Assembly: GCF_016433145.1 (NCBI RefSeq)
Contig: NC_058130.1
Coordinates: forward strand, 732,123,332 to 732,187,331
Length of the DNA stretch: 64,000 bases
Source of the DNA: Gracilinanus agilis
Taxonomy: Eukaryota
Direction of reading: 5' to 3'
Below, one piece after another: positions 6,690 to 30,567 of this stretch; position 1 is the stretch's first letter; every line of letters starts with the position of its first letter. The notes under the pieces were generated by a model, which ran no database searches, was not told the origin of the DNA, and was given only the letters and a program-made list of their open reading frames with translations. The translations under genes were made by a program, and so were the position numbers.

Positions 6690-6915
6690 GGGGCAGCTAG
6701 GTGGTGCAGTAGAGTGCTGATTCAGACCCAGCCTCAGACATTTCCTAGCTGTGTGACCCTGGGTAAGTCACTTAACTCTACTGGTCTGGATTTCCTCATC
6801 AGTAAAATGAGCTGGAGAAGGAAATGGCAAACCACTCCTGTATCTTTACCAAGAAAGCCCCAAAAGGGGTCAAGAGGAGTCAAATATGGACACAGATGTG
6901 ACTGAACAACTTCAA
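6690..6915 (+). mobile_element. Marsupial CORE-SINE (MAR1-like) with RTE-type tail
   Basis: gggcagctaggtggtgcagt..gctgtgtgaccctgggtaagtcac..gagaaggaaatggcaaaccactcc..aagaaagcccc; similar copies near 11760-11980 and 28930-29180. Confidence 0.7.
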
Positions 6916-17700: not shown

Positions 17701-19383
17701 AAATAATCTTAGAAAGACAGGAAAGAGGGAAAGGCTTGCATCCTACAGAAGGTGAGGTTTCAGGTAAGAGCCTCTTTATGAAAACAGCAAGGTGGCTAAT
17801 GGAAGCTACCTAACAGAATTGATACACAGGAATCAATAGGTTACATGGCAAGATGCCTATCCTGGTTAAGTCCTAAGTTCTAGGTAGATGACTGAAAGGG
17901 TTGTGAAACATTGTCTCAGGCCAACTAGAAATACAGGGCTAACGTCTTCACTCACCCACTAATCAGGAGAGGTCAGTCCGAGTGCTAAACCTGCTCAGTG
18001 CCACTGAAAGTCCAGGTCTAAGGGTTACAATTCCAAGGGGAAGAGGGCAGCCACAAGGCAGTTGGCAAGGTGCCCTTGATGAAGACGGGCTACCTAGGTG
18101 GTGGCCGAAAGAGGGGTGAAGCATGTTCTACCCACCTCTTGGCTCTCTCTGGCCAAGGGTAAGGGGGGAAGGAAAGGTGAAGCAGCCACATTGACCCTGT
18201 CCTTATAGAGAAGTATTCTGATATCACTTCCTACCCCAGGCATGAATTGCTACTTCTCTTTGCCATTGACTCACTGAACATCCTTAGTATGACTGTTTAT
18301 CCACCTATAAAATGGAATTAGGATTGGGTGGCCCCCTGAGACCCCTTCCAGCTCTCAAATTCTAGATTATGGCCCTCCTTAGCCTTTTAATGATTCTCCC
18401 CTCCCCAAAGTCATGTTCCCAAAGCTCTGATCAGAACATAAATACCAGAAGTTTGGGCAGGGTAGGTGGGTGGGTGGGTGGGGGCAGTGGATCCAAACTG
18501 CTCACCAGCATTCAATGCCTTCTTTGCCCCTTCTTCCTGGACTCCCAGAGCTCCCCCTCCAAGGTTCACTTTGAGTTGCACTTTGTCTAAGACACTGTCC
18601 CCATCCCCACAGTTGTTAGTTCCAGGATTCCATACATCTTGTGTGTAGATCGTGTATTGATTACTTATGCATGTTCTATGTCCTCCCTTCCTTCCTCAGT
18701 ATGAGCTGAGGTTAGGAACTGACTCGAGTCAGGGGATAGAGATGGTAGTATCTGATGCCCGGGGGACAGGGAAGACATAGGATCGAGTCCTGTCTCACAC
18801 AGACATGTCCTGGCTGTGTGACTCTGAGCAAGTCACACTCTTGGTGTCCCCAGGCAACTCTTTGAGGCTATAAATTGCAAAAAAGGTGAAGAGCTGCTTC
18901 AGTAGAGGATGTTTCCTCACCCAAAAGTTCCCTGAACCAGTGAAATCCAGGTTGAGTTCTGTTTCTTATATACCTAGTGCAATAGATATTTCTTGTTCAT
19001 TAATCATCCAACCTCTCCCAACTGTTCAGACTAATCTCCTACACAGTCCAGTAAAAGACCCATCCCAGGGGTTACTAACCTCTTAACCCCAGTTTGGCAT
19101 CTGATGCCAAATGGACCACCTGGACAAAACAGAAGACCCCCTTCCACTTACCAACTCTTAAGGCTTTCAAAGCTCCACGTCCAGCCTTCTTTCCAGCTGC
19201 TGCTAGTAACAATCCCCACCACTCTTTTGGAAGCCCCAAAGCCATAGTTCTCTCTGTCCCCAGCCTGGGACCTACCCCTTCACCTGTTTCCCAACACCCA
19301 ATTGCTCCACTTTTCCCAGGCCCATGTTGTAGGAAGAAAGGCAGGATACAAGGTTCAGCCTGACCCTCGTAGCAACAGAGAAT

Positions 19384-20413: not shown

Positions 20414-20667
20414 CTACTCCTGGGCCCTCTCACCACCATCCTCATCATCCTCATCACCTGTCAGACTCTCCCCATTCACAGCTGGGGAGTCCAGCCGACC
20501 TTGGGATAAATCTTCAAAATCTGGGCTCAGGACTGGAGAGATAATATCTGGGCTTGTGTCACACGACCCCGTACTCTGCTCTGAGGTAGCAATGGTGGTA
20601 GCTGAGCTGGCTGGGATGGGGTCCACATCATCATCTTCCTCTTCCAGGATGGGAGACTCATGGATAT
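20414..20667 (-). CDS. KXD1: KXD1 last coding exon, (H)[39 protein letters not shown]...RAQE*
   Basis: gacag|AT ATC CAT...GAG TAG; [18 protein letters not shown] identical to human KXD1. Confidence 0.95.
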
Positions 20668-21183
20668 CTGTCGAGGGGAAGAGTCATCAGTGTCAATTGA
20701 GTCACACGGGACTAGTAATCCATTCCTCCTGAGAAATCTAGAAAGAGGAGGAAGGGGTCCTGGGACACAACCAAAGGTGAAGAAGATGGAGGCTCCCCTC
20801 AAGGATGCCTCCTAATTCTTGCCCAGTCAGGAGGAGGAAGATCCCTGAGAAGGGTCCCAGGAGGTCAGCATATCTACACCCATAGACCCAGCTCCCCACC
20901 AATTTGGATCTTACTCTAGGACCACATAGACAATCTATTTAGGTTTAGGAATCAAAGAAAACTGGTCTACAATGAGGAATGTATATACCCTGGAGGGTCT
21001 GAGGAAGAAAGTCACACAGTTCTACTATTGGAAATGACCTTTGAGATCCTCTCTCCCCATCATTTTATAGATGAGGGAATTAAGACTGAAGGAGCAAAAG
21101 GACTTGCCCAAGGTTACACAGTAAACTATAAGGATGCCTGGAATATAAAATGCCAGAACTAGTAGAGCTCATGGTCTATAAAC

Positions 21184-21853: not shown

Positions 21854-21882
21854 AAACCATAGGACTGCAGATCGGAGAGGAA

Positions 21883-22185
21883 ATTTAGAACAATTTAGAA
21901 AATTTAGAACAGAGTTCTGAGGGTCTTAGAACATGGTGTCAGAGCTGTAAAGGCTCTTAGAACCCAGGATGTCAGAGCTAGAGGGCCTTTAGAACACAGA
22001 ATATCAGGGCTAGAGGGGCCTTAGAACAGAGGATGTCAGAGCTGGGAGGACCCTTTGAACATAGAATATCAGAGCTGGGAGGGCCCTTAGAACATTGTCA
22101 GGACTGTGAAGGCCCTTAGAATCCAGAATGTCAGAGCTGGTAAGACCCTTAGAACAGAGAAGGTCAGAGCTAAGGGACTAGAACC
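21883..22185 (+). repeat. About 33-bp tandem array A (ttagaacNNaggatgtcagagctgggagggccc), about 9 units
   Basis: Recurring ttagaac...tgtcagagct...ggcc units directly visible. Confidence 0.9.
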
Positions 22186-22241
22186 CAGATCATAAATGGT
22201 TATAAATAAATCATAACTGATCAAGCCTTAGAGACACTTAC

Positions 22242-22288
22242 GACTAAAAGCATCTGGGTACTGCTTTGACAGCTTGGCTTTCAGAGTC
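22242..22288 (-). CDS. KXD1: KXD1 coding exon 3 (47 bp), TLKAKLSKQYPDAFS
   Basis: cttatag|G ACT CTG...AGT C|gtaagt; human TLKGKLARQHPEAFS. Confidence 0.93.
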
Positions 22289-22492
22289 CTATAAGAAAAA
22301 GGAGGGGAAAAAAAAAGCACAATTTAAATTCTTTACCACAGGTACTCTAGCATCCCCTGTGAGAACAGCCTTGGTCACCTCTCACCTGCCCTGCTTATAA
22401 TTTTATAGGCCCTTCCTGCTTTTGCTAGCCCCCCAGGGCCAGAGTCCCCCATCACTTCAAGACGGGCAGGAAAGGCAGAGCTGGCCACCAAC

Positions 22493-22645
22493 CTGAGCCT
22501 GCGGAAGATGCTGTCCAGGTCCTTCTTCATCTCCATCAATGTCCTGGTATGGTGTGTGAAACGCTCACTCATCTGCTGCATGCGGACGTTGGACAGGTTG
22601 TTAAAGTTCAAGAGCATTTCATTGGTTTTCTCAAATCGGTCCAGC
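22493..22645 (-). CDS. KXD1: KXD1 coding exon 2 (153 bp), [18 protein letters not shown]...[11 protein letters not shown] (KxDL motif)
   Basis: ttcag|G CTG GAC...CTC AG|gttggt; KxDL motif present. Confidence 0.96.
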
Positions 22646-24084
22646 CTGAATTTGGGGAGACCAGAAAGAAGAAGGGAACCAGATTAGTAGGCCCTGGGTA
22701 TATCTGAGAAGTCTCCTGGATCCTCACATAGGAGTCAAGGTTGAAGGGATACAGGGCTTGGAACTACAAAGTCCCCATCCAAACTTGCCTTGGATATTTA
22801 CCCCCTTTGTACCCCAGGGCAAGTCCCTTAACCTTGATGAACTTCAGTTTACTCATCTATAAAATAGGGAACTACTTGTAGTACCCATATCAGAGGATTG
22901 ATGTATTAATGTATTAAGCAAGATAAGCAAAAATTGTAAAGCACTACATAATCTTGGATATTACTGTTGTTACTATTATGAATTAGGATTAGGGGTGTTA
23001 TTATTGTTATACACACAGAGGAAATAACTTCTCTGCTGGTTGCTCCAGGTAGTATAATTTTTGTTATTCTCCATTTTACAGATCAGAAAGATAAAGAAAG
23101 AGAAGGATGCCTGTTTTCCTGGCATGGCTGTGCTACCACCAGATAGGGGCAGCTAGCAGTTAGCAAAGTGGTTAGAGCACTTGGCTTGGAGTCAGAAAAA
23201 TCTGACTTCAAATTCCAAATCCAGCCTCAAACACTTAATACCTATGTAACCCTGGATACCTCACTTAATTCTCACTGCCTAGCCCTTCCTGCTCTTCTGC
23301 CTTGGAACCAATATGCAGTATTGATTCTAAGAAGGAAGGTAAGGGTTTAGAAAAAATACTTGTGTGACCCTAAGCAAGCCACTTGGCCTCTGACTATCTC
23401 AGGTTCCGCAATTGTAGAATGGGAATAAAATAGCACTTATCTCCCAAGGCTGTGAGGTTTAAGTGAAATAATATTTGTAGAAAGTACCAACCTTTAGGCA
23501 GCTGGGTAGACAGAGAGCCAGGCCTGGAGTCAGGAGAATCTAGGATCAAAACTGGTCTCAGACACTTCCTAGCTATGTGACCCTGGGCAAGTCAGTTAAC
23601 TCCAATTGCCCAGTCCTTGCCCTTCTGTCTTAGAATTATTACTAAGCCATAAGACAAAAAGTAAGGATTTAAAAAATAAACTAAAAATTTAATATGTAAA
23701 TAAATAAATATATAATAAAAAATGAAATTTTAAAATAAAAATAAAATATTCACTAGACCCTAATCTTCTCTTTCCTCCTTTCTCAGTCAAATTCAATGAA
23801 AAAGTAGGCACTTACTGGTCTCTACTTTCTCTCCCCTCAATCACTCCTTCCCCCTCTCTACAACCCAGCCTCTAACCTCACCACTCAATTGCAAATGATC
23901 TCTACAGAGTTAACAATGAAAAACAAGTGGCCAAATAGAATGGCCTTCTCTCTACTTTCATCCCTCCAGAACTCCCAGCAGGATCTGACACTGTTGACCA
24001 TCCACTCTTCCTGGGTTTTTGTGATGCTACTCTCTCCCACATCCTCTTCCTACTGTCATTGCTCAGTACCATCCTGACAAACAG

Positions 24085-24290
24085 TTCCAGGCCTCCTTTC
24101 TTTTCTCTCTATTTGACCTCACAAAAGCAAATGTGAAAGGCTAACAGGCCCAAAATGAACTCCAAGAACTCCAAGAGAGGATCAAAAAACAAATAAAAAG
24201 AGACTTAGAAGAAAAATAAGAAAATGATAGAAGAAAGTCAAAAACTCACCAAAGAAAACAGATCTCTAAAAAAAGGGAATGAAAAACTTT
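24085..24290 (+). mobile_element. Probable degraded L1 ORF1 (coiled-coil) fragment
   Basis: A-rich gaactccaagagaggatcaaaaaacaaataaaagagac...aaactcaccaaagaaaacagatctctaaaa resembling L1 ORF1. Confidence 0.45.
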
Positions 24291-26581
24291 TATACTTGAC
24301 CTCATCAGCTCCCAAGGACGATGTGTTCAATGAATGTTTCCCAAATCTACCCATTCTGCCTTAGATTCACTCCTACACTCCAACTGGCTACTGGGCACTT
24401 CCAATTAGATATCCTGTTGGTATCACAAATACAAATTATCCAAAACAGAATCTTTACTTCTCCTCCAACAACCCTTCTTCTAAAGTACACCATTCACTAT
24501 TGTCAACAGCATTTCCAATCTTCCAATCTCATGGTCACCTTTGACTCTTCCATTCTCACCCAAAATAATACACTCAGCTACTAAAACTTGTCATTTCTAC
24601 CTTGACATCATATCTCAAATAAACGCCCTTCCCTCCACTTACATGGCTACCAACCTAGTTTAGGCCCTCACCAACTCTTACCTCACCTACTTCAATACCA
24701 TGTTCTCCCTATCTCTAGTCCATGGGTTCTTAACTTTCTCTTGCATTTCAGACCTCTCTGGTAATCCAGTGATCCCTTTTCAGAATATCATAATTGAAAG
24801 GATTGCAAAATTTCAGTTAGAGCTTAGTGAAAATCAAGATGTAATTTTTTTTCCTATTTAAGATTCATGGAGCTATTGAAATGTAACTATAATAATGCAG
24901 AAAATTTTTTATTTGACTTTACGTATTTGTAATGAGTTTTGTTTTTCTTGTTTTTTCAATTCGGAGGGAGTGATGAGAGGGAAAAGATATGAAGTGGAAA
25001 ATAAAATCATCCTGGGAGGCAGCTGGGTGGCTCAGTAGATTGAGAACCAGGCCCAGAGATGTGAGGTCCTGGATTCAAATCTGGCCTCAGACACTTCCTA
25101 GCTGTGTGACCCTGGGCAAGTCATTTGACCCCCATTTCCTAGCTCTTACCGCTCTTCTGCCCTGGAACCAATATGCAGTATTGATTCTAAGATGGAACGT
25201 AAGGGTTTAAAAAAGATAAAATAAAATCATCCTGAATGTTAAAAAATCTATCCAATCTATTTACTATTAAATTCAGATTAATAAACCCTGATCTAGCCTC
25301 TCCCCAACCCAATTTATTCTCTTAAGAATAGATCTTGATGACACTTGTACAACCCAATGGAGTTGTTTGTCCGCTCTGGGAGAGGGGCAGGAAAAGAAAA
25401 TGAATCATGGAAATATGGAAAATATTTTAAAATAAAGTGAAAAAAATAAGTCTTGACCTAATAACACATATAATCCAGATCAAAATGCTTACCATCTCCT
25501 GGATGGGGGAGGGAAGGGTGGGAGGGAGACAATTTGGATCTTATTAATTCAGAAAACATACATGGAAAATTGTTATTACATGTAATTGGGAAAATGTCTT
25601 TTAAAAATTTTCAAAAGAACTGATTTGGGGTGGCTAGGTAGACTCAGTTGATTGAGAGCTGGGCCTAGTAAGGGGAGGTCCTGGGTTCAAATCTTATATC
25701 AGACACTTCCTGTGTGGCATTGGACCCCATTGCCTATAGTCCTTACTGCTCTTCTGCCTTGGAACCAAAATAGAGCATTGATTCTAAGATAGAAGATAAG
25801 GGTTTGTTTTTTTTAAAATAGATCCTACCACGTCAATCCCCTACTCAACAAATTCAAGAAGCTCCTGTGTCTGACTTTTGAGACTCCACTTGGCATTTTC
25901 TTGGCAAAGTAATGGAGTGGTTTGCCATTTCCTTCTCATTTTAAAGATGAAGAAATAGAGGCAAACAGGGTAAAGTGACTTGCCCAAGTCACACAGCTAA
26001 TAAGTGTCTGAGATAGGATCTGAACCACAGAGCCACCTAGCTGCCCCCTCCACCCATTCCTTCTAAAGAAGGCCCTTCCTGGTCTGTGGTGGATGCTTGC
26101 TCTTTCCCCTCCAAGGTAATCTTGTATCTTGCTTCATGTGGATGTTTTTTATATACCAATATATGTGTGTGTTATCTTCCCCATTAGCAGGAACGCTCTT
26201 TGAGGGCAAGAACAGTTTCTTTTTTTCTTTGTATCCTCTATGCCTAGCACATGGACTGGCACATAGCAGGTAGGGGACAGGAAATGGAGGAAATAAGCTT
26301 TATATAGCTTCTATTACATGCCAACACTGTGCTAAGTGCTTTTTATAAATATGATCTCATTTGATCCTTACAACAACCCTGCTAGGTAGGTGAAGTTATT
26401 CTCATTTTGCTGTTAAGGAAACTGAGGTGAACAGAGGGTTAAGTGATTTGTTCAGAGTCATACAGCTAGGAAGTGCTTGAGGCTGGAATTGAATTCAGGT
26501 CTTTAGGTGCCTAATAAGTGCTTACTGAGGGATAGATGAATGCATAGAAGGATGAATGGATGGATGGATGTCTTGACTCAC

Positions 26582-26682
26582 ATGTTCTTCTGAGCCTGAA
26601 TGATGGCATTTACATCCTCTGAATTCACCATGCTGAGGATCCGATTGCAGAACACATCTGAGGCAGAACTGGGGGATTCCAT
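26582..26682 (-). CDS. KXD1: KXD1 first coding exon, [33 protein letters not shown](M)
   Basis: Exon 26582-26712 (ctgtag| acceptor, GAG-rich UTR); ATG at 26682; AAC AT|gtgagt; human [34 protein letters not shown]; total CDS 555 nt. Confidence 0.96.
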
Positions 26683-27129
26683 CTCCTCCTCCTCCACCTC
26701 CTCCTCTGCAGCCTACAGACCAGTCAAAGCCAGAGGTTACAAGACTGGCCAAGCAGGCATGTGTACTTGCTCCTTCCTGGTACTCTCACTTTCTCCTGAT
26801 ACCCTTTCTCAACCTGGAAGAATCTAGCCTAGACTTTTGTTTTATTAGCAAACTGTATCCCTCAGACTCTGGGACTTCCCAATAGACTGTGGTCCTGATA
26901 GGACCATCAGATGGTCTTCACTGGAGTTTTTAACCCTGCTAACAGGCAGGCTGCCATGACAGGACTTTGAGCAAGGTCTTGACAGAGAAATCCCTCAGAG
27001 TGCCTGGAAACCCCAGTACTGTCCTAGAAAGACTTGCTCAGGAATTAGTTTTCTTCTGTGTAAAATGAGAGGGGGAAGGAAATTTGCACTCAAGATAAAA
27101 GAAACTCTTAATTCATGGCATGCTATATC

Positions 27130-27590
27130 TATCCCAAGGACCCTGTTGCCTCTAACATTTTCTAGTCTAGGGGCCATTTCAGTTCCAACCTTCTATGTCC
27201 TAAGGGCTCTCCTAACTATGATAATCTGTGTTTTAAGTGCCCAGCCAGCTCTGACATCCTGGGTTCTAAGTGTCCGGCTAGCTCTGACATCCTGGGTTCT
27301 AAGGGTCCTCCCAGCCCTGACATCCTGGGTTCTAAGAGTCCTCCCAACTCTGACATCCTGGGTTCTAAGGGTCCTCCCAGCTCTGACATTCTCTGTTCTA
27401 AGGACCCTCCCAGCTCTGACAGTTTTTGTTCTAAAGGGCCCTCCCAGTCCCGACATCTTCTATTCTAAAGTCCCTTCCACTCTGCCATTTTAGGTGCTGA
27501 GGTCCCGACCAGTTCAACCATTCTGTGTTCCAAGGACCCTTTTGACCTGACATTCTATAAATGTTCTAAAGTCCTAAGGGCCCTCCCGGC
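27130..27590 (-). repeat. 33-bp tandem array B, inverted relative to array A, about 13 units
   Basis: ccagctctgacatcctgggttctaagggtcctc units; the ORF track shows the 11-aa repeat RAGRTLRTQDV. Confidence 0.92.
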
Positions 27591-27879
27591 CGTCCCAGAA
27601 GTTTAGGCTCGGAAGTCCCTTCCCCGCTGAGATCCCATGCTCTCTGTTCTGAGACAGTCCGAACCCGCAGTCCAAGCCCACATTCTAGAACTCTGACTCT
27701 TTCCAGGATTTCTGGGGTCCTCAGCGGACCATGCACTTCCCTTTGCCCAGGGCCGTGCTATCATAAGCCGTGCTGGCTCGAAAAGGAGAGGGGCTGGGGG
27801 GAACCGAGGCCAGATATGAGGGAGCAGAAGTGCCCAGCTGGACGCCCCCACCCCCACTCCCTGTTGGGGCCGAGGGAGG

Positions 27880-28160
27880 CGGCGAACAGTGACCCCTCCC
27901 AAACTGGCTCCTGGTCTCCCCCACTCTGTCTCCCACTCCGCGCCGCCCACCACCCCCAGACTCAGCTGCAAAGGCGGCGGCAGTGACAGAGGTGGCAGCA
28001 GCAGCACCTGCACATCTGGAAACTCGCACTTCCGGGATGGCGCTCACGCGCAGCGGCCTCTGCGCTACGCCGGCTGACGTCACAACCAGAGAGATGGGCT
28101 GGGCGGAGCCGCGGAGCAAAGGGGGTAGAGGAGGACTTAGGGGAGGAGACAACTGGAGGC
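27880..28160 (-). promoter_or_regulatory. KXD1: CpG-island promoter / non-coding exon 1 of KXD1
   Basis: CpG-rich; ETS CACTTCCGG 28027-28035; palindromic CRE TGACGTCA 28075-28082; GC box gggcgg; exon 1 donor not pinned down (candidate CAG|gtgctg after 28008). Confidence 0.7.
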
Positions 28161-29589
28161 GGGACCAGGAAAGGGGTTGGTCGGGAGGAGTCAGGGGAGG
28201 GGCTAGAGATATACTTGGGGCGGTTCTTGGGGGAGGAGCCAGGGCAGAAGGAGGCCAAAGAGTGGAGAAATGAAGGCAATAGGATGCTTTCTTCTTAAGA
28301 AACCTTTAGCCAGTTCCTCCCCAGAACAGTTAGTGGCCCCTAGATGGCACAGTGGAGATTGCTGGGCCTGGGAGTCAAGGAGATCTGAGTTCAAGTGGAG
28401 CCTTAAAGCCCTTTTTTATTAAGTTTTTAAAGCTTTTTTTTTAAAGCCCTTACTTTTCTGTCCTAGTAATATCTCTGTCCTAATAAAACTCTAAAACTGG
28501 TAGTAATACCAGCTTTGTCCTAGTAACAAATAAGTAAATAAGGGCTAGACAAATAGAATTAAGTGACTTGCCCATGGTCACACAGTTAGCAAGTATCAAA
28601 GTTCGAATTTGAACCCAGGTCCCTCAACTCCAGACCTGGAACGATATCTACTGTGCTACCTAGCTGCCCCTTTTGACTCTTACTAGCGGTGTCACTTTGG
28701 GCAAATCAAGCAAAAGTGTAGCACCAATCACCCGGGGTTATTGTGAGGATTAAATGAGAAAATGTTTATAAAACTCAGTGTATGTTCACATAGAACACTT
28801 AATATTATATTATTTATCTGTCAGATGAGAATATTGGACTAGGTTTCATCAGTCTTTAATTTTTTTGTGTGTGTCATGAATCCCTTTGTCAATCAATAAA
28901 CATTTATTAAGCACCTAGTAAGTGCCAGGAAGGGCAGCTAGGTGGGATAGCACAGTAGATAGAGTGCTGGGCCAGCAGTCAGGAAGACTCATCTTCCTGA
29001 ATTCAAATCTGGCCTCAGACATGTACTAGCTGTGTGACCTTGGGCAAGTCACTTCACCCTGTTTGGCTCAGTTTCCTCACCTATAAAATGAATCAGAGAA
29101 GGAAATGGCCAACCACTCCAGTTTCTTTGCAAAGAAAACCCCACTAAGAATCATTAAAAGTCAGAAACGGTTGAACAACAACATGTGCCAGGCACTGTGC
29201 TAAATACAAGATATACAAAAAGAAGCAAAAGATCATCCCTGACTTCAAGTAGCTTATAGTCTAATTGGAGAGAGAACATGCAAAAAAAATGCATAAGAAG
29301 CAAATGATATGCAAGATAATAAGAAATAATTAGCAAAGGGAAGCTAGAATTGGCATAGAATTAAGAGAGCTTGGGAAAGGCTTCCTGTAGAAGACAGGAT
29401 TTTCAATGGGACTTAAGGAAAGTCATAGAAGCTAGGAAGGAGAGAAGATGAGAGCACATTCCAGGCATGGAAGAAAATGCCTGGAGCCTAGAGACAAAAT
29501 ATCTTGTTCATGGAACAGCCAGGAGGCACAGAATCAAAGGGTTATTGAGGTAAAGCCCAAGGAGACTACAAAGAGAGTAGCCAGATGAA

Positions 29590-30440: not shown

Positions 30441-30567
30441 AAAACATGGAAAAAAAAAGAATCCTTTGTCTAAAAGGTCTCTAAACTCCCTTCCAGCACT
30501 GACATTCTCTGTTCCAAGTCCCCCTCTTAGCTTTGACATTCCATGTTATTTAAAAAAAAAGGGGTGG

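What the first reader, a model, noticed from the sequence alone, without database searches (positions are those of the whole stretch)
21883..27590. Two inverted 33-bp tandem arrays bracket KXD1 exons 2-4: candidate RNA clamp for circularisation or exon skipping
Array A (21883-22185) starts about 55 nt after the donor of the 47-bp exon. Array B (27130-27590) lies about 420-880 nt upstream of the acceptor of the ATG exon. They share a unit in opposite orientation; for example 21956-21980 is the exact 25-nt reverse complement of 27279-27303. In the minus-strand pre-mRNA they could form a long multi-register duplex looping out exactly the exons at 26582-26712, 22493-22645 and 22242-22288. That geometry is established to promote back-splicing and ADAR editing when made by inverted Alus. 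Predicted products are a 331-nt circRNA containing the start codon, or a non-coding exon1-to-last-exon mRNA. The unit resembles the MIR-type segment agagctggaagggaccttag seen elsewhere in the window (about 1820, 14910, 62690), so it may be a SINE-derived minisatellite. Function is inference.
Basis: partly seen in the sequence, partly recalled or inferred. Interest (0 to 1): 0.7.

Follow-up and report, generated by a model that had tools for sequence, protein, structure and literature searches.

The report
Inverted intronic minisatellites around KXD1 exons
Two real 33-bp tandem-repeat arrays, probably grown from the tail of an old retroposon, sit in opposite orientation in two KXD1 introns and could pair in the pre-mRNA, but that is the known recipe for circular RNAs and no RNA data could be read, so any product is still only predicted.

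Summary
Array A (about 21912-22190) and array B (about 27121-27520) are tandem arrays of one 33-bp unit in opposite orientation. They lie in the last intron and in the inferred first intron of a minus-strand KxDL-motif gene (KXD1). They bracket exons of 131, 153 and 47 nt, 331 nt in all.

They are the only similarity between those two introns, and the only reverse-complementary match in the gene that spans exons. Predicted pairing is strong: cofold gain -182 kcal/mol against -34 +/- 6 for shuffles, and 210 A-B pairs in the global fold of the 7.4-kb pre-mRNA.

The unit aligns to the terminal part of MIR3-type retroposon relics in the window. A SINE/LINE-tail origin is plausible but not proven.

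No RNA evidence was obtained.

Given two arrays in this gene, an inverted, exon-bracketing arrangement has about a 30% chance. The most likely reading is neutral repeats that give a standard inverted-repeat substrate for low-level back-splicing.

An earlier, unchecked note of this scan (s1-153905) reports a similar retroposon-terminus minisatellite elsewhere in this genome.

The parts
21912..22190 (-). Array A: about 8 units of the 33-bp repeat (some units are 29-32 nt). It lies in the last KXD1 intron and begins about 50 nt downstream of the exon-4 donor in the transcript. On the minus (transcribed) strand the units read in the same sense as array B reads on the plus strand.
   Evidence: (unit profile E 3e-9 to 0.03)
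21882..21911 (-). A short 9-10-bp micro-repeat (three copies of a TTCTAAAT-like motif) that ends array A on its low-coordinate side. It may be the retroposon 3' terminal microsatellite (inference).
27121..27520 (+). Array B: about 10-12 units of the same 33-bp repeat. The core at 27245-27447 is homogeneous and the edges are degenerate. It lies in the inferred intron 1, about 410-810 nt upstream of the exon-2 acceptor in the transcript.
26582..26712 (-). KXD1 exon 2 (131 nt), which holds the start codon. The ATG begins at 26682. The borders are AG and GT.
22493..22645 (-). KXD1 exon 3 (153 nt), the core of the KxDL domain.
   Evidence: PF10241, E 2.2e-15
22242..22288 (-). KXD1 exon 4 (47 nt). 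Its donor is the predicted back-splice donor.
20417..20667 (-). Coding part of the last KXD1 exon. The acceptor AG is at 20668-20669.
27976..28110 (-). Inferred promoter and non-coding exon 1. The region is CpG-rich and carries CRE-like and ETS-like motifs. The exact exon borders are unknown.
   Evidence: inference only
30478..30545 (+). A third, two-unit copy of the same repeat. It lies upstream of the inferred KXD1 promoter, so presumably outside the pre-mRNA.
   Evidence: (E 0.004 and 0.7)

Best explanation
Arrays A and B are ordinary non-coding minisatellites. Their 33-bp unit most likely derives from the 3' terminal segment of a MIR3/L3-type (CR1-clade) retroposon. They expanded in place in two different KXD1 introns and happen to lie in opposite orientation.

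Shown by computation: because they lie on either side of exons 2-4 and have no competing partners, the minus-strand pre-mRNA can form an imperfect, multi-register duplex of about 210-250 bp.

Inferred: by the established inverted-repeat mechanism of back-splicing, this would bring the exon-4 donor (22242) close to the exon-2 acceptor (26712). It would then allow some production of a 331-nt circle of exons 2-4 and/or the reciprocal exon 1-to-last-exon transcript. I expect this to be low-level splicing noise rather than a selected regulatory device.
For: The arrays and their units are real.

Similarity between the two introns is confined to the arrays, so there was no larger inverted duplication.

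Pairing is strong. Cofolding gains -182 kcal/mol with 251 intermolecular pairs, against -34 +/- 6 for 30 dinucleotide shuffles. The global minimum-energy fold of the 7.4-kb pre-mRNA keeps 210 A-B pairs in 28 helices, the longest 23 bp.

The pair is the only exon-spanning complementary match. All others lie inside intron 2 and gain only -45 to -50 kcal/mol.

All exons have canonical splice sites.

The unit aligns to the terminal part of the MIR3-type relics of the window, and two of the weak hits of the unit profile fall on that same part of those relics.

From papers:
- MIR3/THER-2 is the most abundant SINE in the two marsupial genomes tabulated, at about 0.7 million copies (Table 1). The same paper states that marsupial SINE tails originate from LINE2, LINE3 and RTE elements (PMC3403934).
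- CR1-clade elements are often severely 5'-truncated and end in a conserved hairpin plus an octamer microsatellite (PMC4316615).
- Inverted repeats of 30-40 nt suffice for circularisation in minigenes (PMC4201285).
- Most circRNAs are read as TE-provoked splicing noise (PMC8516420).
Against: No transcript data were seen, so even low-level back-splicing is unshown.

KXD1 is short (about 7.4 kb) with short flanking introns (about 1.3 and 1.6 kb). Opossum circRNAs come mostly from long, GC-poor, many-exon genes with long flanking introns (PMC8516420).

Array B is transcribed about 5 kb before array A, so intron 1 may often be spliced out before the partner exists (inference).

The retroposon-tail origin rests on a short alignment, with 17 of 20 identical in the core and 21 of 33 over the unit, and on non-significant profile scores (E about 3-4). 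No Repbase or Dfam consensus was available.

Both arrays and the 30.5-kb mini-array share the variant ...CTGACAT..., which the window's single MIR3-type relics lack. The true source may therefore be a specific subfamily or a pre-existing array.
Confidence: 0.6

Rival explanations
1. The inverted arrays are an effective RNA clamp that produces a substantial circKXD1(exons 2-4) and/or an ATG-less exon 1-to-last-exon mRNA. This would lower KXD1 protein output and attract ADAR editing.
For: The same structural evidence as above. The duplex is about four times stronger than any other complementary pair in the gene. It starts within about 50 nt of the back-splice donor. Short repeats are sufficient in minigenes (PMC4201285).
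Against: KXD1 is absent from the stored 338 of 1,535 opossum circRNAs, though that part is truncated and so inconclusive. No paper links KXD1 to a circRNA of its own. The gene has the wrong profile for a circRNA parental gene. Repeats alone do not guarantee circles, since repeats and exons must collaborate (PMC4201285 abstract).
Confidence: 0.12
2. The duplex never forms in vivo and there is no RNA consequence. Intron 1 is removed co-transcriptionally, or helicases and hnRNPs keep the arrays apart. The arrays are then inert intronic repeats.
For: Array B and the exon-2 acceptor are made about 4.5-5 kb before array A (coordinates). The flanking introns are short and have consensus donors, such as the GTAAGT after exon 4. 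The helices are short, the longest 23 bp, and interrupted.
Against: Thermodynamic prediction strongly favours the pairing. Published minigene work shows that much shorter repeats act.
Confidence: 0.23
3. The arrays act at the DNA level. Array B lies 400-900 bp downstream of the promoter and could be a tandem platform for a DNA-binding protein (an intronic enhancer or silencer). Array A would then be incidental.
For: The position of array B next to the CpG-rich promoter region. The core of B is homogeneous, with 87% matches.
Against: No motif or conservation evidence was obtained. Homogeneity is equally explained by recent slippage. The same unit occurs at two other places with no promoter nearby.
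Confidence: 0.05

Closest known systems
Inverted-repeat (reverse-complementary match) driven exon circularisation, as with inverted Alu pairs in primates or SINE1 dimers in opossum (PMC4201285; PMC8516420)
   Same: Complementary sequences sit in the two introns that flank the candidate circle, close to canonical splice sites. No stronger within-intron competitor exists. The predicted stem is of Alu-like length, about 250 nt.
   Different: The arms are tandem minisatellite arrays, not single SINE copies, so many pairing registers are possible. Arm identity is lower, about 75%. The host gene is short with short flanking introns. No back-splice product has been observed.
Minisatellites grown from retroposon 3' termini (the CR1/L3-type hairpin-plus-octamer end; PMC4316615), including the scan's own unchecked note s1-153905
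   Same: The unit has the length and position of the terminal segment of the MIR3-type relics. It ends in an ATTCT(N)TG-like octamer. No retroposon body is attached, which fits severe 5' truncation.
   Different: Homology to the retroposon tail is short and statistically weak here. The arrays share a variant that the window's single-copy relics lack.

Membership tests
Inverted-repeat-flanked circRNA locus | Reverse-complementary sequences in the introns upstream and downstream of the circularised exons | tested here: met
Inverted-repeat-flanked circRNA locus | Cross-exon pairing is not out-competed by within-intron pairing | tested here: met
   All other complementary matches lie inside intron 2 and are about four times weaker. 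The global fold keeps 210 A-B pairs.
Inverted-repeat-flanked circRNA locus | Canonical acceptor and donor at the predicted back-splice sites | tested here: met
   AG before 26712 and GT after 22242, read on the minus strand
Inverted-repeat-flanked circRNA locus | A back-splice junction observed in RNA, enriched by RNase R | not testable with these tools
The stored circRNA table is truncated.
Inverted-repeat-flanked circRNA locus | Upstream arm lies inside the transcript (array B is intronic) | tested here: inconclusive
   Exon 2 has an acceptor and no upstream ATG, and a CpG-rich promoter-like region lies beyond array B. No transcript defines exon 1.
MIR3/L3-tail-derived minisatellite | Head-to-tail units of constant period | tested here: met
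MIR3/L3-tail-derived minisatellite | Unit homologous to the 3' terminal segment of the retroposon | tested here: inconclusive
   The unit aligns to the terminal part of four MIR3-type relics of the window. Profile hits there are weak, at E 3.5-3.8. No reference consensus was available.
KXD1 (KxDL-motif protein gene) | KxDL domain | tested here: met
   The exon 3 peptide matches PF10241 at E 2.2e-15, 57 bits against a cut-off of 27.2.

The most novel reading that the evidence does not exclude
The inverted minisatellite pair is a selected, marsupial-specific switch. Its multi-register duplex diverts a regulated share of KXD1 pre-mRNA into a 331-nt ATG-containing circle. Read exon by exon, that circle has an open frame of about 148 codons: the first 100 KXD1 residues including the KxDL core, then about 48 out-of-frame residues. 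Array copy number would tune the share.
Probability: 0.04. Interest if true: 0.6.

Novelty: new member of a known kind. Interest (0 to 1): 0.3.

Why it matters
If the circle exists, it would be a clean natural case in which tandem-repeat arrays, rather than single SINE copies, supply the complementary arms for back-splicing. Repeat-number polymorphism could then change the ratio of circular to linear RNA of a housekeeping gene for lysosome and BORC-related trafficking.

As it stands, the locus is a well-defined and easily testable prediction, not a discovery. The mechanism is textbook, and the arrangement is not improbable by chance.

Tried and rejected
1. RNA evidence. The look-up of sequencing runs listed 22 probable RNA runs holding 5-9% of the sampled words, which is consistent with exons only, plus one DNA holder. 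No junction, editing or depth data exist.

2. Published opossum circRNAs (PMC8516420, supplementary file 12). The stored text holds only 338 of 1,535 circRNAs. KXD1 is not among them, which is inconclusive.

3. Literature. No circRNA from KXD1 turned up. The search for minisatellite-armed back-splicing returned a single paper, which I did not open. No paper text holds the tail 13-mer.

4. Rfam on both flanking introns gave no family.

5. An inverted segmental duplication is rejected, because similarity stops at the array edges.

6. A single ancestral array split by an inversion is rejected, because exons 2-4 keep the gene's orientation.

7. Growth of array B from the SINE immediately upstream is rejected. 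That relic (about 27040-27100) is of the type with a 'ggagaaggaaatggcaaacc'-like continuation, as at 6791-6825 and 44887-44921. It is not the MIR3-type tail.

8. Recombination between the arrays is judged unlikely, because exact matches are at most 26 bp.

9. A genome-wide census of the unit is not possible, since no collection here holds this genome. A metagenome scan was not used, because hits would mostly be host or human contamination.

Frames were read exon by exon.
Full report
**What is there**

Tandem Repeats Finder finds two period-33 arrays. One is at 21937-22171 (7.3 copies, 74% matches). The other is at 27150-27491 (10.4 copies), with a homogeneous core at 27245-27447 (6.1 copies, 87% matches). 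A 33-nt autocorrelation places the periodic stretches at about 21912-22190 and 27121-27520.

Cutting both arrays into units in a common orientation gives one family. Examples are window:27363-27395:+ and window:22060-22092:-. A profile built from the units, run over the window, scores significantly in only three places:
- array A, with 8 units on the minus strand;
- array B, with 8-9 units on the plus strand;
- weakly, a two-unit copy at 30478-30545.

A degenerate 21-mer of the unit matches 9 times against 0.02 expected.

The arrays are in opposite orientation. Inverted pairs reach 81 nt at 88%.

**The gene**

On the minus strand the exons 26582-26712, 22493-22645, 22242-22288 and the last exon from 20667 read in one continuous frame. 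Each has AG/GT borders. Exon 3 matches Pfam KxDL (PF10241, E 2.2e-15), so the gene is KXD1.

Exons 2-4 sum to 331 nt, as claimed. Array A lies in the last intron, about 50 nt after the exon-4 donor.

Array B lies between the exon-2 acceptor and a CpG-rich region at about 27800-28200 that carries CRE- and ETS-like motifs. That region is most likely the promoter and the non-coding exon 1. The placement of array B in intron 1 is therefore inferred, not shown.

**Pairing potential**

Similarity between the last intron and intron 1 is confined to the arrays, 21864-22202 against 27136-27643, with a best alignment of 277 nt at 75%. There was no larger inverted duplication.

Cofolding the two arrays as minus-strand RNA gains -182 kcal/mol over the separate folds, with 251 intermolecular pairs. 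Thirty dinucleotide shuffles of array A gain -34 +/- 6.

It keeps 210 A-B pairs in 28 helices, the longest 23 bp.

A reverse-strand self-comparison of the gene shows that A-B is the only complementary match that spans exons. The five others all lie inside intron 2 and gain only -45 to -50 kcal/mol. By the usual criteria the locus is a good substrate for inverted-repeat-mediated back-splicing. Inverted repeats of 30-40 nt suffice in minigenes (PMC4201285).

**Origin of the unit**

Diverged MIR3-type relics are there nonetheless, and also at 18296-18375.

In a multiple alignment the array unit falls on the terminal part of those relics. Against the copy at 18296-18375, 17 of 20 core positions and 21 of 33 overall are identical (my count). 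Two of the weak hits of the unit profile fall at that same place in the relics, but at E 3.5-3.8 they are not significant on their own.

MIR3/THER-2 is the most abundant SINE in the two marsupial genomes tabulated, at about 0.7 million copies. The same paper states that marsupial SINE tails originate from LINE2, LINE3 and RTE elements (PMC3403934). CR1-clade elements are often severely 5'-truncated and end in a conserved hairpin plus an octamer microsatellite (PMC4316615).

Several features fit that picture:
- the units end in ATTCTCTG/ATTCTATG-like octamers;
- array A ends in a short TTCTAAAT-like micro-repeat (21882-21911);
- no retroposon body is attached to either array.

That the MIR3 tail specifically is of L3/CR1 type is from my own knowledge. 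It was not tested against a reference consensus.

The SINE relic just upstream of array B is of another type and is not the source. An earlier unchecked note of this scan (s1-153905) describes a 1.6-kb minisatellite built from the same kind of terminus elsewhere in the genome.

One puzzle remains. All three local copies share a ...CTGACAT... variant that the single-copy relics lack. This points to a specific subfamily or a common array-bearing source.

**Chance**

Take two arrays placed at random in the four introns (1263, 3936, 204 and 1574 nt). The chance that they land in different introns is about 0.60. The chance of opposite orientation is 0.5. An inverted, exon-bracketing pair is therefore expected about 30% of the time (my arithmetic from the exon coordinates).

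The arrangement by itself gives no sign of selection. Another first-reader note in this genome reports inverted SINE dimers bracketing exons of SEC31B (s1-192300). That fits the view that such geometry is common in this TE-rich genome.

**RNA evidence**

None could be obtained. The run search listed 22 probable RNA data sets holding 5-9% of the sampled words, roughly the exonic share of the stretch, plus one DNA holder at 82%.

Those places were sent to no search tool afterwards. In my scripts they were replaced by N.

The opossum circRNA annotation of Gruhl et al. is stored only up to circRNA 338 of 1,535. KXD1 is not named in that part, which is inconclusive. No paper in the library reports a circRNA from KXD1. 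Rfam finds nothing in either flanking intron.

**Arguments against an efficient clamp**

- Opossum circRNAs come mainly from long, GC-poor, many-exon genes with long flanking introns (PMC8516420). KXD1 is about 7.4 kb, with flanking introns of 1.3 and 1.6 kb.
- Array B and the exon-2 acceptor are transcribed about 4.5-5 kb before array A, so intron 1 may often be gone before its partner exists (inference).
- The helices are short and interrupted.
- Gruhl et al. conclude that most circRNAs are TE-provoked mis-splicing.

**Predicted product, read exon by exon**

From the ATG at 26682, the frame runs 100 codons to the end of exon 4. After the back-splice it would continue in another frame through all of exon 2 without a stop, and end four codons into exon 3. 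That is about 148 codons. This is hypothetical.

**Verdict**

The functional half is untested.

The most likely reading (0.6) is two neutral retroposon-tail minisatellites that incidentally create a standard inverted-repeat substrate, giving low-level back-splicing or skipping at most. An efficient clamp has about 0.12, no RNA consequence about 0.23, and a DNA-level role about 0.05.

It is a new member of a known kind, with an unusual kind of arm (tandem arrays). It is of modest interest until junction reads are counted.

Noticed in passing
window 30478-30545: A third, two-unit copy of the same 33-bp repeat in plus orientation. It sits directly before an A-rich run and a tRNA-derived SINE that starts at about 30573. 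All three local copies of the repeat lie within 9 kb, and none is found elsewhere in the 64 kb.
   Followed up: partly
window 21882-21911: A 9-10-bp micro-repeat (TTCTAAAT-like, three copies) ends array A. It resembles the octamer microsatellite that ends CR1-clade retroposons.
   Followed up: no
window 26530-26570: A GGAT/GATGAATG-type microsatellite lies only about 12-50 nt inside intron 2, next to the exon-2 donor.
   Followed up: no
window 28040-28105: A promoter-like stretch upstream of KXD1 with a TGACGTCA (CRE-like) motif and a CCGGAAGTG (ETS-like) motif in a CpG-rich region. CpG observed/expected is 0.75 at 28000-28199.
   Followed up: no
window 23211-23600, 25068-25138, 25968-26026, 26429-26499: Several CORE-SINE fragments in both orientations inside KXD1 intron 2 form within-intron complementary pairs of 44-71 nt at 75-87%.
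   Followed up: partly
window 42858-43093: A run of 236 N, either an assembly gap or masked. It was left untouched.
   Followed up: no
Its message says the filter also trips by chance and is no evidence of anything. They lie in intron 2 outside both arrays, were sent to no search tool afterwards, and were replaced by N in scripts.
   Followed up: no
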